From assembly GCA_038087875.1 (NCBI GenBank), contig CM075982.1:18104001-18168000 (forward strand): a stretch of DNA of 64,000 nucleotides. Reading direction: 5' to 3'. The first letter of the stretch is position 1; every line of letters starts with the position of its first letter. Position numbers and translations under genes: made by a program. Shown here in pieces: positions 5,116-32,351 of this stretch. The notes beneath the pieces were generated by a model. That model made no database searches. It was not told where the DNA came from and was given only the letters and a program-made list of their open reading frames with translations. The stretch comes from Malacoraja senta (lineage: Eukaryota).

Positions 5116-7956
5116 TCTAATCAAAGAATGTTAGTTAAAAGAATTTATAAAATAAATGAACAAAAATAGCATTGAATTGCACTTTTCACCTTTGTTTTCT
5201 GGACTTGCTAAAACATAGCAGATCAACCTGCATACTAATTATATGTTTACCATCGCGGATCAAGGGACATGGTTGCTTTGCTGCTACCCATCATGAAAGA
5301 GGGCAATATAAAAATGCAAACAAAATATACCAAACTGAATTTCAAGGCTTCTAATTAGACTAAACTGAAGTAGGTAGGGACATGTACATATACACTGTAC
5401 ATATATACAGTAAATGGATCGATTGTAATCATGTATTGTCTTTCTATTGACTGGTTAGCACGCAACAAAAGCTTTTCACTGTACATCGGTACACGTAACA
5501 ATAAACTAAACTGAACAATCAGTAAAGGAGAAGACGCTGAAACACAAGAGGAAGTTGGCATCCATGGTCTGGAAATTTCCCAAGGAGAAATCAACTTTAC
5601 AAGTAACAAAGGAGGAGAAATTAATCTTTAGTGATCCAGTTGAAACATGTACAATACTAAATGTTGCCTGCTGGACTCACATCCACAAACCAAATATGCA
5701 ACTAGCAATCAATGTTCTGCTTTATATCTAACGCTAGCGACCAAACTCAATTGTTTTTTCATCATCCATGAGGCAAATGATAAAGGACTCCTGCACAATC
5801 CTTGTTCAGCTGATGTTTCACAGAGAGCAGGTAGAATATTTGTTATCAACAGTGAAAGACGGCTTCAAGTCGACGGTATCAATAATTTTAAGAGGGATGC
5901 AGGCACTTAACTGGAGAACTAACTAAGGAACATGGCTATTGCATGGTGTGGTTTGTTTATGAATTCAGCCTCTGAGATAGATGAAGGTGTAGTTTAATGT
6001 TCCCAGGGTATGATGCACCAGTGTTAGTTACAGTTGTTTGTATATTACAATTTTTCTATTATCGATAATTCGCTGTAATTTTTGCTAATAGTTTCTGGCT
6101 AGTGGCGAAAAATTGTAAATGCCCTATGACATCCATTAATTAGATGTTGCAAGTAGAAGTGAATTTACCATTAGCCTTGTCCCAGGCCTATGATAATGCC
6201 AGTTCTGTGGACATGGTTCGCTTGAACCTCTTGCTATAGATGTGGAGAAATGGATCGCAAATCGAAGATTCTAATATTATGAGGCACAGGATGTTGGAAG
6301 GAATGTCCAGGAATGTTCTAGTAGGCTGGAAGATCAGCTTATATAAATATCACCATTTTGGTTGTTCGTGTGCGTTATGGCATCATTTTATCTTCACTAA
6401 TTAAATAATTGCTAGACAGCAGAGTTATCTCTCAGATTGAAGATTAAATACAGGAAAGCAATCGAGCTACAAGAATAAAATGATAGAGCTTCTGGGTGAA
6501 GAGAGCTAGGGCTGGTGAACATGGTGCAGCAAGTCTGAAATGCATGTGCAGTAGTGGCACCTGGAGAGACACACGGATGGCACCTTGAATAAGTAAATAA
6601 CATCATGTTTTGCCAAATAAGGTGGTATCTGTTGTATACCCAGTAAGAAAATGCAGACAGCTGCGTTTGAGAATGCTGCAACTGGAAATTGGTGCTGTGT
6701 ATCACTTCATCATTTGTTTCCACCAGCTGTATTGGTATATTCAAAGTGGTGGCAGCGTGAGGAAACACAATAAAAATAATCATATCTCCCTAAAAGTTTT
6801 ACCCAAGGATGCTTCCTTTAATCGCTAACATGTGGCTTCAGATTGTTTCTCTTGTATTTTGTTTCAAGATACAGGGAAAATGGAACACATCAATGGAATA
6901 CATATTAGTTTGGCTAATCCCTGAGTAATTCTGCTGAATTACGCCAAAATGAAGCTGACAGTAATCACAAAATCACAAAATCTGCAGGGGACTGATCATA
7001 TTTCCAGACTGTTGAGCCTCTCAAACAGCAAACTTGAATCTATGGCTTGCACATTACAATTCATTACAATGGGGATGGGTTGCAAAAACTAATTAAGAGT
7101 TCATGAAACTTAAATTTTAATTGTCATAACATCCTGCTTAGGACCAAAGGTCTATCAGTCCTATCCCAATGTTTAACCTATATTGGTTTTTTTTCCTTTG
7201 AAGTATTTGACTTTCTTTTCTTAAATTTACTTTTGCATCTGTTTCCATCCATTTTTCAAACAGGCATTCTGATCAAGAAATCTTAATGCCGATACTTTTT
7301 TGTCTCATGTTCTCTTGCCATTGTTAATTATTTTATACATTTGTCATGCGAGCCTCCTGTCAGAAGAAATAATTTCTCCTTTACCAAGCCATTCATAATC
7401 TTGACTACTTCTTTTTACACTTCTAGCCAACCTTTCCTGCTCAAAAGGAAATATCAGTTTAACTCTTATTTCTTTGAACAACTGAGGTCTCTCATCACTA
7501 CTAGAAAACATTATTAATACCATAATGCAATCAAATTTTGTGAAAGGCTAGTCGGTTCTGTCTCTGTTCTCCCTACTTTTCCTTACCAATTGGATATAAA
7601 TTTTCACTAAAGCCTTTAACGAAATGATCATTAGTTCAATAGACAAATTTCTGGATACAATTTATATATGGAGGAAGGACATTCTAAGATTAATAAGATA
7701 CTCTCTACTAAATTGTTCGTAGGATTTGGAATTTTCTACCACAAATGAAGCTTATTGCTAATGAACTGCACATGCTGTTCAGATGGTAATGAGAAATAGA
7801 AAACAATGATGGGAATGGAGCACACACAAGATTCTGATTGGAAACTGGCTTCAAAACTCCCAGAAGAGAGAGAGAGAGGAAAAGAGAGGGGGCTGGATAG
7901 GAGAAAAAGAGAGAGAAAAGAGGAAAACCAGAGAAAAGAAGGAAAAGACTACATAC

Positions 7957-8176
7957 ATCCTGTGATCTGTTTGGTGGATGTCTGTGTCTTGGACTGTGTC
8001 TGTCACTCCACGAAGGACCCTTGTGTCCATTCTCTCTGGGAGTCACTGATCTGTTGCGTCGGCCTTGCAGAGGAGATTGACTGGGTTCGTTTGTGTCATT
8101 CTTGGGCTGCCTGGAAATAGCACTGCGTTTGCTTTTGGAATGTGATGTTCTACGCTCTGAAGATGGGCTGTGGGAA
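7957..8176 (-). CDS. SRRM3: SRRM3 coding exon (~exon 11), 220 nt, phase 2-0: SHSPSSERR...SVTPRENGHKGPSWSDRHSPRHRHPPNRSQD
   Basis: ttttatttgttttccag|TTCCCAC...CAGGAT|gtatgt. S/R/P-rich, lies within ORF 7708..8187(-), and is in frame with the previous exon. Confidence 0.87.
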
Positions 8177-9120
8177 CTGGAAAACAAATAAAAGCAAGTG
8201 GCCGATTAAGTGTAACCAATAAGCTCGTTGCTGAGTTCCAACATTGGTCAGTGGGTGAACTTTGATTAGTTTTTAGTCAATGAAGAGTAGAAAGATTGTA
8301 ATATACTGTTGCACACAGTGCATTTGCGAATACAATTCAAGTACATTTTGACCACACTGCAGCCCCTCAATCACTCCACACAGCTTCCTTCATTGTAGTA
8401 CCACCTAATCAGAACGCTATTAAACTTCACCCTTAACCTGTCATGCCACTATTAAATATTAAAAAGTTCATGTGGCAAAATCTGGCACTTGCACGTTAGG
8501 TATTTGTTGATGGTTTATTTTCTCCTATGCTTGATGAACTTAAGACCAAATAATATTGGGATTAAACAATTAACTAAATGCAGATAAATCCTCCATGGCA
8601 TTGCTGTTTTATGAACAATATTGGGGAGGTATTACAGCAAGAAAGCGTTAACTTATCGAAAATGGGTATTATAAGCAAGGCATCTTAATGTTGTGAATTT
8701 TGCCAGTAACTTCACATAAATATCCATGTTTTGGAATTTGATATTTAAATTGTGATATTATATATTTTTGTGTCTTTGCCAATTAAAAAAAAAAATTGTA
8801 ATAAACTATTTGTTTTAATTACAATGTCAGGAATAATCAAAAACAATCAATGGCCTTGGTGACTTTTAAGCTACGAGTGAGTGGCATAGATGGCAATGGT
8901 GACGCCAAGCAGCATTGTGCCCCAGATGCACCCTATATTAAGGGCATTGTCATCTGCCAAAAGTTCAGAGGGATTTTTTAAGTGGAGATGGTTCCAGATA
9001 TCACTGGAATGAGTTGCTGCTGCTTAGGACCTAACTGTTTGGCTCCAGGACCTTGGTTCAGATGAATAGTCTTTACAGGCAGCAGGTTGTCAAGGTGAAT
9101 CCAGGCCTGTGTATCAGTAA

Positions 9121-22500: not shown

Positions 22501-22638
22501 AGTCCTGGGACAAAGAAGATTTCTGCAGCATAGACGACCAGCCGATGCCCATAATCCCAATAGCACTAGTTGTGTGATCATTGACAGTAGGCAGCTAATG
22601 AACCTTTACAATGGTATCCAATGATTTTCTATGCTTAC

Positions 22639-22675
22639 CTATGCTTCCTCTTTTTTTCTGGAACCTGAATCAGAC
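22639..22675 (-). pseudogene. SRRM3: Disrupted SRRM3 exon (~exon 8, SDSGSRKKRKH): acceptor reads GG instead of AG and there is one extra A (37 nt instead of 36)
   Basis: Minus strand reads cttatacgg|GTCTGATTCAGGTTCCAGAAAAAAAGAGGAAGCATAG|gtaagc. The donor is intact. The A7 run shifts the frame to ...AGA AAA AAA GAG GAA GCA TAG. Confidence 0.8.
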
Positions 22676-23154
22676 CCGTATAAGATGAGAAGTGACTGAG
22701 TGTAGGGGTTTGCTCGATGTAGTCTTGAGCACAATGCTCTTTGATTGCTCCACAAAGAAAATACTTGCAAAATATATTTAAGATTCCATGTATCAAGGAT
22801 ACTTAAACAAGTGGTTTATTTCAAAGAGATTAAGACATTCTCCTAGTTTTTTTTATCACCGGATCACAACATTAGGCAATTATTGTGGGTCACTTTTCCC
22901 ATTTTAGAAGACATAAATACAAAGACCATTTTCTTTAGTAAGAACAATTAACACGAGCATTTGGAAAAACCAATGATGCACAATGTTCATTTGGATATCA
23001 AAGAGCCACTTCACAATTTCTAAGTCCTACCTTTAATGTTCTGAGAAGAAAGGTTACTGACCTGAAATGATCACCATCTCATTCCACAATTGCTGCCTGA
23101 CCTGCTGAGTATTTCCAACATTTTAGATTTAATATATAATTTTGAATGTGACTT

Positions 23155-23985: not shown

Positions 23986-24727
23986 GTTAACTTCCACATC
24001 ACATATGAACAAGTTATTCCCTATACAACATTCCTACTTTGTTGTGTGCCTGAGATGACTAAATTGTAATAATTCTGTGTTGAACTGGGATGCCACAAAG
24101 GTTAAATCTCATTACTTACCTGGTATATTTTGGGCATCCCACTAACATGGTACTGTATTCAACCAAATAATCTCTTCCAACAGCTAATCTCCTTGATCAC
24201 CAACTTTCTGATCTCCAAACTGACACTGGCACTGACCACAGATCTCCTATTAGACCCTTATTGGTCTTCAATCCCAACTGGACTCGAGATGTGACCAGAC
24301 ATCTTACTGCGGCCTTCTTCCCCTGACAGAGAATCTATTTTGGAAGCTGAAATGCTACCTTGGGAACCATTTACATTTGTAGTTGCAGACCACAACTTAA
24401 ATTAGCATGCCTTGCAACAGGGAGCCAAAATAAACAGAAACAACTGTCCATGGAACTCGATGGTATAAGAATTATCCAGATCCCTCACATTTCCTCATGT
24501 GCAAGGTTTTAAAAAAGATTGTCTGGAAACAGATTCAAAATTGCACTGTAATCTATTTCAAAATCTTGATGGTTCCTTTAACTTTCATTCAGATATTGTG
24601 CTGTGGCCAAGGATGTGAGAAAGACATTATGATTTTCTCCAGGGATTATGCAGCCGATCGATTCTGCATTAGATGTGCTATACCTAGAGGGGCTGGTATG
24701 ACTACAGAAGAACAGAAGCAACTCCAC

Positions 24728-24796
24728 CTGTCTCTCTTGTGTTTCTTCCCACTCTTCTTTTTTCTCTCTTTCCGTGATGATGAAGAACTTTCGCAA
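24728..24796 (-). CDS. SRRM3: SRRM3 coding exon (~exon 7), 69 nt, phase 2-2: CESSSSSRKERKKKSGKKHKRDR
   Basis: tttttcttcatag|TTGCGAA...GAGACAG|gtggag. Matches human CGSSSPLRKKKKSVKKHRRDR. Confidence 0.9.
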
Positions 24797-25760: not shown

Positions 25761-26379
25761 TAACATGAAATGGAATGCCTGTGGAAATTGTTTCCTTCCC
25801 TTCCCAATTGTATAAATAACCAAGCTCTCCCCTCACGAGTTTCAGCTTGGGCTAAAATCACATGTGTATGATGGGCCTGATAGAATCACAATATTGATAC
25901 AAACCGCACAGCAACAGACCTTTATAAAATCCAATCTATGTAGGCAGTGATAGAGAAATGAAACTGGAAAAATAAAAGTATTACAAGAGAAAAACACCTT
26001 TCCATTTCTTTAAAAAGGCAGAAATAGTTTACCATTATAAATTTTCTGATGCTTCTGAAATGCTCTTGCTCAATGCAGCCTTCCTCAGGATGTATCCTGG
26101 TTATTTTAATTAATTATTTTCCGCCAAAAAATGGCATGAACATCTTAATTGTTGTTTACATTTATTACCTCAATATCCAATCTTTTCCCTCTAGTCAGAC
26201 GGTTGAGTTAAGTGAGGATGGAGTGGGCACTTTACCTGTCTCATAGGGAACTGTCTGCTTGTAGAGTGTGTGGAATGGAGGTAGTAGAAACCTTTAATAT
26301 ATTTCCTTTGAGGGTAACAATATTGCTCGCAAGTTGAAAAATGTCCAACCACACTTCAGATGTTTTAAAAGATTCAAAT

Positions 26380-26690
26380 TGATTTTTCACGCAAAGGATG
26401 GTAGGTGTATGGAATGAACTGCCGGGGGAGGTAGTTGAAGTAGGTACTATCACAATGTTCAAGAAACATTTAGGAAGGCACATGGATAGGACAGGTTTAG
26501 AAGGATACGAGCCAAATGCAGGCAGGTGGGACTAGTGTAGATGGGACATGTTGGCCGGTGTGGGCAAGTTGGGATGAAGGGCCTGTTTTCATGCTGTATG
26601 ACTCTATGACTCTATGATTCAGATTCAGATTCAGATTCAACTTTATTGTCATTGTGCAGTGTACAGAATAAGCAACAGTACACAGCAAAG
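26380..26690. mobile_element. CR1 3' end (+) abutting a reverse Rex/L2-type tail with (ATTCAG)n
   Basis: tggaatgaactgccggggg...ctctatgactctatga, then attcagattcagattcagattcaactttattgtc. Confidence 0.8.
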
Positions 26691-26779
26691 AGCATTTAAT
26701 GACTTGCTCATTCAAGCATTTCGATAGGACAGTGTCACTTTTTCTATAGATGACCTCCACTTTGACCTTCTCACACTTA

Positions 26780-27016
26780 AGGGCCTGTCCCACTTTCACG
26801 ACCTAATTCACGACCTCTGCCGAGTTTGCCCTTGACTCATACTCGCAACATGGTCGTCACGAGGTCGTAGGAGGTCGTAGGTAGGTCATAGCAGGCCGTG
26901 ATGGTAGTCGTAGGTACTCATGGCATCAAGTAGGTCGGGCCGTTTTTCTCGCATGATGAAAAATGTCCACGAGAAAAAGAGGTTGTGAATTAGGTCGTGA
27001 AAGTGGGACAGGCCCT
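26780..27016. mobile_element. PIF/Harbinger-type MITE (237 bp, 39-bp TIRs, TTA target-site duplication)
   Basis: Left TIR agggcctgtcccactttcacgacctaattcacgacctct; the right TIR is its reverse complement with one mismatch. TTA at 26777-26779 and 27017-27019. Internal GTCGTAG repeats and no coding capacity. Confidence 0.9.
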
Positions 27017-27020
27017 TTAC

Positions 27021-27050
27021 CTTCTTCCTGATCCAGCTTTCCTCTTTTTG
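27021..27050 (-). CDS. SRRM3: SRRM3 30-nt exon (~exon 6), phase 2-2: KKRKAGSGRS
   Basis: aattgccag|CAAAAAGAGGAAAGCTGGATCAGGAAGAAG|gtaaag. In frame with both neighbours and the same length as the human KKRRLESECS exon as I recall it. Confidence 0.85.
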
Positions 27051-27642
27051 CTGGCAATTATCAATGTGAGAATGCAGTGAAACAGATGAGCAAGAGTGAT
27101 TGGTAAAGAGAGGAAGCCAAGCTTCAGTCTGTAAACCACTCAAAGCACAAGAAACCATCAGGTTATTAAAACAGAAAATGTGCTGTGTCATATTGTAAAT
27201 TGTGGGACAAATATCCCCATAGATAAGCAGCAAGCAGCATCCATAAAGCTCATGGGAATATCAATTGCTTGGTATTAATGCAGAGGAGAGTGTTTCAGGA
27301 CTGCACTGCAAACAATTTTAAGAAGGTTTTGTCTGTAATAAATCTAGTGAGGATATTGGTTGTACTGAAATTTGCAGTGAATGCAGAACAGGATTGAATC
27401 TAAACAAAAAGCTGGACTGTTTGCCATGTTTTTACATTTGAACTGCGAAAATAACCCCATATTAGCATTATTAGTGGGGTAAGCCATTTATGATTACTTC
27501 CTACTTTGATATAATGGAAATAAATGAAAGGGCATCATGTAACAGATCTTAAAAATGTAAGAATTATCTGTCATAATTTCAGACCAGAGTGATCTTCCAA
27601 AACCATACTGAACCAATGGTACAAAGGCATTCTACAACCTTT

Positions 27643-32270: not shown

Positions 32271-32351
32271 CGGATTTTGTAGTGCCCCGATTTCTTCTTC
32301 TTCTTCTTCTTGGGTGGTGGTGAGGGAGAACTGCTTGATTTCCTTTTCATA
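32271..32351 (-). CDS. SRRM3: SRRM3 coding exon (~exon 5), 81 nt, phase 2-2: MKRKSSSSPSPPPKKKKKKKSGHYKIR
   Basis: Acceptor ctgaag|TATG and donor ATCCG|gtaaat. Contains the SPPPKKKKKKK motif of SRRM3. Confidence 0.88.

What the first reader, a model, noticed from the sequence alone, without database searches (positions are those of the whole stretch)
26770..27050. A Harbinger-type MITE has inserted inside the 5' splice site of SRRM3's 30-nt exon
Seen: the TTA TSD (26777-26779 and 27017-27019) coincides with intron positions +2..+4 of the donor. Removing the element reconstructs GAAG|GTAAGTGTGAG, a perfect consensus donor, whereas the present sequence is GAAG|GTAAAGGGCC, which has lost +5G and +6T. 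The 39-bp TIRs would form a long pre-mRNA stem starting at +5. Established: +5G is important for U1/U6 pairing, and 3-bp TWA TSDs mark PIF/Harbinger elements. Inference: the insertion may have weakened or re-tuned inclusion of a short in-frame exon in the microexon regulator itself, or the hairpin may loop the element out and partly rescue splicing.
Basis: partly seen in the sequence, partly recalled or inferred. Interest (0 to 1): 0.85.

Follow-up and report, generated by a model that had tools for sequence, protein, structure and literature searches.

The report
Old MITE in SRRM3 exon donor
A small, very abundant jumping-gene remnant sits exactly inside the splice signal of an ancient 30-letter exon of the SRRM3 gene in this cartilaginous fish. 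The insertion is old and shared with related species, and the one relative with usable RNA data skips the exon, so this looks like ordinary exon loss rather than new regulation.

Summary
A 237-bp element (26780-27016) has 40-nt inverted ends that are 98% complementary. It is flanked by TTA on both sides and lies between +4 and +5 of the donor of a minus-strand exon (27050-27021). Removing the element and one TTA gives AAG|GTAAGTGTGAG. This fits the GTGAGTG donor of the same exon in a turtle and an owl.

The exon is a real, ancient SRRM3 exon. It has the same boundaries as in turtle and owl, 24 of 30 bases are identical to the turtle exon, and chimaera, reptile, bird and mammal proteins contain it.

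The insertion is not recent. DNA contigs of two other species (B and D, about 4-5% diverged in the flanks) run into both ends of the element at the same site. Both species have also lost the exon's acceptor (AG to AA). Spliced contigs from two runs of species D join the upstream exon directly to the downstream exon, so the 30-nt exon is skipped there.

No RNA data were available for the window's own species, and no empty site was found in a close relative. The most likely reading is a dying exon, with the element as the oldest lesion found. Whether the element caused the loss is not shown. This is a neat example of a known kind of event, of moderate to low interest. The scan also holds first-reader notes on SRRM3 erosion in this same window.

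The parts
26780..27016 (.). Non-coding MITE, 237 bp, outermost bases A...T
   Evidence: TIRs. Stops in all six frames and CpG observed/expected 0.95 against 0.29 for the window. Summed contig depth is roughly 10^4 times or more that of the unique flanks in four species.
26780..26818 (+). Left terminal inverted repeat, carrying two copies of the subterminal motif TTCACGACCT
   Evidence: pair I1, direct repeat D4.
26978..27016 (-). Right terminal inverted repeat, with one mismatch to the left arm (CACAACC against CACGACC, a CpG-type transition)
26777..26779 (.). Left copy of the 3-bp target-site duplication TTA
27017..27019 (.). Right copy of the duplication TTA; on the minus strand these are positions +4 to +2 of the donor
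27021..27050 (-). 30-nt SRRM3 coding exon encoding (R)KKRKAGSGR(S), phase 2 to phase 2
   Evidence: Turtle and owl have an exon with identical boundaries; 24 of 30 nt are identical to the turtle exon.
27019..27020 (-). GT of the present donor AAG|GTAAAG
   Evidence: U1 duplex energy -6.8 kcal/mol.
27051..27052 (-). Acceptor AG of the 30-nt exon. It is intact in the window and changed to AA in species B and D (27051 C>T, together with 27053 G>T).
   Evidence: table 3.
26766..26776 (-). Former intron positions +5 onward (GTGTGAGAAGG), now pushed 240 nt downstream
   Evidence: It matches the GTRAGTG donors of turtle and owl.
32271..32351 (-). Upstream SRRM3 exon (81 nt, MKRKSSSSPSPPPKKKKKKKSGHYKI..), donor CG|GTAAAT
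   Evidence: In species D contigs it is joined directly to the exon at 24796.
24728..24796 (-). Downstream SRRM3 exon (69 nt, (S)CESSSSRKERKKKSGKKHKRDR)
   Evidence: Covered exactly by spliced contigs of species D.

Best explanation
A PIF/Harbinger-type MITE from a very high-copy family inserted into the TAA of the GTAAGT donor of an ancient 30-nt SRRM3 exon. This happened in an ancestor of at least three species: the window's species A, and B and D.

The 3-bp duplication kept GTAA. Positions +5 and +6 (G, T) were replaced by the element's first bases (A, G), and the donor now sits at the foot of a 40-bp RNA stem. For a 30-nt exon that depends on both of its splice sites being recognised, this most likely lowered inclusion. 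Skipping is in frame and removes ten K/R-rich residues, which amphibian and ray-finned-fish gene models also lack. The loss was therefore tolerated and the exon began to decay.

Shown: the anatomy; the age of the exon; the shared insertion; loss of the acceptor in B and D, which by parsimony came later; and the skipped form as the only spliced form assembled in D.

Inferred: that the element caused the first drop in inclusion, and that the exon is little used or unused in the window's own species, where AG, GT and the reading frame are still intact.
For: Anatomy.

The 3-bp TTA reading is backed by the reconstructed donor AAG|GTAAGTGTGAG, which fits cag|...CAG|gtgagtg in turtle and owl.

Age of the exon: KKRKPGCER in Callorhinchus, KKRKPGSER in reptiles and birds, KKRRLESEC in mammals.

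Shared insertion: right-flank contigs of B and D begin at 26997, about 20 nt inside the element. This matches species A's own contig, which begins at 26996. Left-flank contigs of B and D span about 26663 to 26803-26814, so they end 24-35 nt inside the element.

Acceptor: AG changed to AA in B and D (table 3).

Splicing: spliced contigs in two runs of D cover 24726-24795 and continue straight into the end of the upstream exon (..AAATCAGGGCACTACAAAATCCG), without the 30 nt.

Donor weakening: U1 duplex energy -12.5 before and -6.8 now; +4 onward is paired in the predicted ensemble; fold z-score -6.4.
Against: - No RNA of the window's species could be examined, and its exon is intact.
- In D the acceptor lesion alone would explain the skipping.
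- The upstream exon's donor is weaker by the U1 measure (-5.5) and is used in D, so loss of +5G and +6T need not be disabling.
- Narcine isoform X2 lacks this exon and the upstream exon as well, and amphibian and ray-finned-fish models lack it. The exon may therefore already have been optional.
- A second small exon nearby (22695-22630) is also lesioned and skipped without any MITE.
- Contigs show what is present, not what is absent, so a minor isoform that includes the exon is not excluded in D.
Confidence: 0.45

Rival explanations
1. Neutral passenger. The 30-nt exon was already optional or dispensable in batoids before the insertion. The donor's TAA simply happened to be a suitable Harbinger target, and the element had no effect of its own on splicing.
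For: Narcine SRRM3 isoform X2 lacks this exon and the upstream exon. Amphibian, gar, bowfin, bichir and teleost models all lack it. A neighbouring small exon is being lost without any MITE. The present donor is no weaker by U1 pairing than the neighbouring donor that is in use.
Against: The exon has kept its exact boundaries and 24 of 30 nt between this fish and a turtle, so it was under constraint for most of its history. The insertion removes two consensus donor positions and buries +4 onward in a long stem. By parsimony the acceptor lesion in B and D came after the insertion.
Confidence: 0.33
2. Still a working exon in the window's species. The GTAAAG donor works well enough, or the hairpin makes inclusion conditional, so the element is harmless or re-tunes inclusion. 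Decay is confined to the B/D branch.
For: In the window the acceptor CAG, the donor GT and the open frame are all intact. GTAAAG keeps six contiguous U1 pairs. All seven substitutions listed as private to A in the unique flank lie in the intron, outside the exon and its splice sites.
Against: Thirty nucleotides give no power to detect constraint at about 2% divergence per lineage. The only spliced contigs obtained, from a carrier species, skip the exon. The predicted stem occludes +4 to +6. Species C departs from the window at 27067, so the exon region may be missing there too.
Confidence: 0.2
3. Assembly artefact. The element was wrongly placed at this site by a misassembly through a high-copy repeat.
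For: The family is extremely abundant, and the DNA run of the window's species has a hole at 26669-26750.
Against: Independent contigs from two other species carry both junctions at the same site, and species A's own contig crosses the right junction with no differences.
Confidence: 0.02

Closest known systems
Tourist-like MITEs of the PIF/Harbinger superfamily (for example mPing)
   Same: A small non-coding element with long TIRs and a 3-bp TTA/TAA target-site duplication, which is the superfamily's mark (PMC2213677, PMC2836001, PMC4561436). It has subterminal short repeats and a very high copy number. The terminus GGGCCTGT resembles plant Tourist ends; that comparison rests on my memory only.
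   Different: It is in a cartilaginous fish. No autonomous partner was identified. The duplication could be read at this one copy only. The element is CpG-rich (observed/expected 0.95) in a CpG-poor genome.
Transposable-element insertions at or near splice sites that cause exon skipping or alternative splicing (Alu insertions in human disease genes; MITEs at alternative splice sites in mulberry, PMC6593561)
   Same: An insertion next to a splice site alters its sequence context, and the exon is skipped in a carrier species.
   Different: Here the target-site duplication regenerates GTAA, so a usable GT donor remains. The event is old, shared between species, and followed by secondary decay of the acceptor in one branch. 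Causality was not tested.
Lineage-specific loss of short, frame-preserving exons in low-complexity protein regions
   Same: The exon is in frame (30 nt) and encodes K/R-rich residues. It is missing from the gene models of several other vertebrate groups. A second small exon of the same gene (22695-22630) is also lesioned and skipped.
   Different: A datable first lesion (the MITE) can be placed before a second one (the acceptor loss).

Membership tests
PIF/Harbinger-derived MITE | 3-bp target-site duplication TWA (TTA/TAA) | tested here: met
   TTA stands on both sides. Removing the element plus one TTA restores AAG|GTAAGTG, in line with GTGAGTG in turtle and owl. Only this one copy could be read.
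PIF/Harbinger-derived MITE | Terminal inverted repeats | tested here: met
   40 nt, 98% complementary; 0 matches expected by chance.
PIF/Harbinger-derived MITE | Short, non-coding, many copies | tested here: met
   237 bp with stops in all six frames. Summed contig depth is 2x10^5 to 2.7x10^6 against about 20-50 in the unique flanks, in four species. This is a depth ratio, not a copy count.
PIF/Harbinger-derived MITE | The same 3-bp TWA duplication at other copies of the family | not testable with these tools
   There is no second copy in the window. No elasmobranch genome could be searched, and the metagenome scan was empty.
PIF/Harbinger-derived MITE | An autonomous partner with a DDE transposase and a Myb/SANT-like second ORF that shares the termini | not testable with these tools
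   None is present in the window.
piggyBac-type MITE | 4-bp TTAA target-site duplication | tested here: not met
   The four flanking bases are TTAA on the left and TTTA on the right. A TTAA reading would reconstruct a poor donor, GTTAAG.
SRRM3 orthologue | Exons collinear with and similar to named SRRM3 proteins | tested here: met
   The exon at 7960-8178 hits Narcine SRRM3 at 88% identity, E 5.7e-24, as the sole hit. Six exons are collinear with Narcine, Callorhinchus and turtle SRRM3.
SRRM3 orthologue | cwf21 and SRRM_C (eMIC) domains | not tested
   Neither domain is encoded in the window. The gene extends beyond both ends of the window.
SRRM3/4-dependent neural microexon | Length 3-27 nt and neural-regulated inclusion | tested here: not met
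   The exon is 30 nt. No evidence on tissue regulation was obtainable.

The most novel reading that the evidence does not exclude
The MITE was the causal first hit that killed an exon conserved since before the split of cartilaginous and bony vertebrates. Related species would then hold successive stages of that death: hit but otherwise intact in A, acceptor lost and exon skipped in B and D, and possibly deleted in C. This would be a natural time series of exon loss driven by a transposon, made possible because the GTAAGT donor consensus contains the Harbinger target TAA.
Probability: 0.3. Interest if true: 0.5.

Novelty: new member of a known kind. Interest (0 to 1): 0.33.

Why it matters
If the element did cause the loss, this is a clean, datable vertebrate example of a DNA-transposon remnant disabling a deeply conserved exon. 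It would also show that the donor consensus GTAAGT is itself a Harbinger target, and that the 3-bp duplication preserves GTAA. The consequence for SRRM3 is probably small. The ten residues lie in a low-complexity K/R stretch that several vertebrate groups lack, and neither the cwf21 nor the eMIC domain is touched.

Tried and rejected
Steps that gave nothing:
- The Callorhinchus SRRM3 locus could not be fetched because the gene range exceeds 100 kb.
- Narcine isoform X2 is not on record as a gene product.
- No other elasmobranch SRRM3 protein appeared in two protein searches.
- A search with the open reading frame that crosses the exon-element junction, meant to fish orthologous contigs of other species, found nothing.
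- A metagenome scan for the 23-nt terminus found nothing.
- Rfam found nothing in 26200-27300.
- Two RNA runs of species G held the exon at 7960-8178 but laid nothing on the exon at 24728-24796.
- MaxEntScan is not installed, so I used U1 duplex energies instead.

Readings considered and rejected:
- A piggyBac reading with a TTAA duplication, because the right side reads TTTA and the donor it reconstructs is poor.
- Rescue of the donor by looping out the hairpin, because the sequence across the base of the stem does not restore the consensus.
- Reading the spliced contigs of D as a retrocopy in DNA. The tool marks one run as 'probably DNA'. However, neither run covers the flanking introns, which a DNA run would, so spliced RNA is the simpler reading. 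The retrocopy reading is not fully excluded.

Full report
**1. The observation**

The window holds an inverted repeat at 26779-26818 and 26978-27017. It is 40 nt long, 98% complementary, with 159 nt between the arms. A 23-nt terminal motif occurs only at these two places, against 0 expected from shuffles. TTA flanks the element on both sides, at 26777-26779 and 27017-27019.

The element proper is 26780-27016, 237 bp. It has stops in all six frames. Its CpG observed/expected ratio is 0.95, against 0.29 for the window. It carries subterminal TTCACGACCT repeats and internal GTCGTAGG repeats.

On the minus strand the sequence reads ccag|CAAAAAGAGGAAAGCTGGATCAGGAAGAAG|gtaaagggcc. The right TTA therefore covers donor positions +2 to +4, and the element starts at +5. 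Removing the element and one TTA gives AAG|GTAAGTGTGAG.

**2. The gene and the exon**

R/S/K-rich open segments on the minus strand line up in order with SRRM3 proteins.

- The exon at 7960-8178 had a single hit among 1.8 billion representative proteins: Narcine bancroftii SRRM3 isoform X2, 88% identity, E 5.7e-24.
- The upstream exon (32351-32271) ends in phase 2. The 30-nt exon then reads (R)KKRKAGSGR(S), and the exon at 24796-24728 continues in frame.
- The same ten residues are present in Callorhinchus (KKRKPGCER), in reptiles and birds (KKRKPGSER) and in mammals (KKRRLESEC). They are absent from amphibian, bichir, gar, bowfin and teleost models, and from Narcine isoform X2.
- In the fetched turtle and owl loci the exon is cag|CAAAAAGAGGAAACCCGG.TC.GAGCGCAG|gtgagtg. 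It is 30 nt long with identical boundaries, and 24 of 30 nt match between the turtle exon and the window.

So the exon is ancient and real. The reconstructed donor GTAAGTG agrees with the GTGAGTG of tetrapods. That agreement also settles the duplication as 3 bp: a TTAA (piggyBac) reading fails because the right side reads TTTA and the donor it implies is GTTAAG.

**3. The family**

DNA contigs of four species were laid on 26300-27500. Summed depth over the element was 2x10^5 to 2.7x10^6, against about 20-50 in the unique flanks. The family is therefore very abundant and shared between species. Most laid records were 90-95% like the window's repeats, although that count also includes the other high-copy repeat at 26382-26668. 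The 3-bp TTA duplication and long TIRs are the marks of PIF/Harbinger elements (PMC2213677, PMC2836001, PMC4561436). Other copies and an autonomous partner could not be examined.

**4. The age of the insertion**

Species A (X1) matches the window exactly, and its contig begins at 26996. Species B (X3) and D (X7) differ from the window at 3.8% and 4.8% of sites in 26997-27500.

- Their right-flank contigs begin at 26997, about 20 nt inside the element.
- Their left-flank contigs run from about 26663 to about 26803-26814, which is 24-35 nt inside the element (tables 3 and 8).

Both junctions therefore exist at the same site in B and D, so the insertion predates the split of A, B and D.

Species C (X6) aligns only from 27067 rightward, and its 2095-nt contig continues for about 1.5 kb of unlike sequence. 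This could be a deletion of the exon region or a foreign insertion, and it remains unresolved. No empty site was seen in a close relative.

**5. Later decay**

B and D both carry 27051 C>T and 27053 G>T. On the minus strand this turns the acceptor CAG|C into AAA|C. The window keeps the ancestral AG that turtle and owl also have. By parsimony the acceptor loss came after the insertion.

**6. Splicing evidence**

No RNA run of species A was offered. Two runs of species D each gave one contig covering exactly 24726-24795 at 100% identity, with nothing on the flanking introns.

- On the upstream side the contig continues into the end of the exon at 32271 (..AAATCAGGGCACTACAAAATCCG), without the 30 nt.
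- On the downstream side it continues into the exon at about 15316 (GTCTACAAGCCC..), skipping 22695-22630 as well.

So in a species that carries the element, the assembled SRRM3 message lacks the 30-nt exon. Three caveats apply. Contigs drop rare isoforms. One run is flagged as possibly DNA, although the uncovered introns argue for spliced RNA. And D also lacks the acceptor.

**7. Mechanism**

The predicted U1 duplex energy is -12.5 kcal/mol for the reconstructed donor and -6.8 for the present one. The neighbouring donor CG|GTAAAT scores -5.5 and is used in D. The sequence change alone is therefore not clearly disabling.

The predicted pre-mRNA fold has an MFE of -120.4 kcal/mol and a z-score of -6.4. 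It pairs the two arms from +4 onward: the probability of being unpaired is 0.15 at +4 and 0.03 or less from +5 on. This would compete with U1 and U6 binding.

Reading across the base of the stem does not restore the consensus, so the 'loop-out rescue' idea has no support. Skipping is in frame.

**8. Verdict**

The anatomy is confirmed, and the exon's identity and age are established. The functional claim is only partly supported. The element is the oldest lesion found in an exon that is skipped in one carrier, D, which like B has also lost the acceptor. Causality and the state of the exon in the window's own species are open. The rival reading is that the exon was already dispensable. That reading is serious, because several vertebrate groups and one Narcine isoform lack the exon, and a neighbouring small exon is being lost without any MITE.

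This is a tidy instance of a known kind of event. The scan's first-stage notes on this same window (s1-140517 and s1-140797) point to the same SRRM3 erosion.

Noticed in passing
window 22630-22695 (minus strand): The orthologue of the SDSGSRKKRRHR exon, which is intact in Narcine and Callorhinchus proteins, lacks an acceptor AG here (..tatacgg|GTCTGAT) and reads into a stop after an A-run. Spliced contigs of species D join 24728 directly to the exon at about 15316, so this exon is skipped there too.
   Followed up: partly
window 7891-7956 (minus strand), just downstream of the donor of the exon at 7960-8178: The Callorhinchus SRRM3 model (376 aa) reads through this donor. Its tail (DVCSLFPLNSVSLSF..) aligns with the window's intron translation (DVCSLFLLFSGFPLF..). 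This suggests a conserved sequence after the donor, possibly a conserved retained-intron or early-termination isoform that lacks the eMIC domain.
   Followed up: no
window 26382-26668: A second, even more abundant repeat in all four species, with summed depth up to 1.8x10^7. It ends in TATGACTC repeats and a (GATTCA)n tail. It contains AAGGGCCTGTTTTCA, and most family copies read AAGGGCCTGTTTCCAC there, which resembles the MITE terminus AAGGGCCTGTCCCAC.
   Followed up: no
window about 9148, 39566, 44160, 47083, 56283/56367, 57005, 62218/62265: At least nine copies of a roughly 45-nt motif (CAGAGATGCTGCCTGTCCCACTGAGTTACTCCAGCATTTTGTGTCT). Two pairs lie in opposite orientation 50-85 nt apart. 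These are probably the ends of another repeat family.
   Followed up: no
window 27067 (species C contig): The contig of species C matches 27067-27500 at about 97% and then continues for about 1.5 kb of sequence unlike 26300-27066. This is either a deletion that removes the 30-nt exon and the element, or a lineage-specific insertion.
   Followed up: no
window 26780-27016: The element keeps 15 CpGs (observed/expected 0.95) in a window with CpG observed/expected 0.29, although the insertion predates a species split with 4-5% flank divergence.
   Followed up: no
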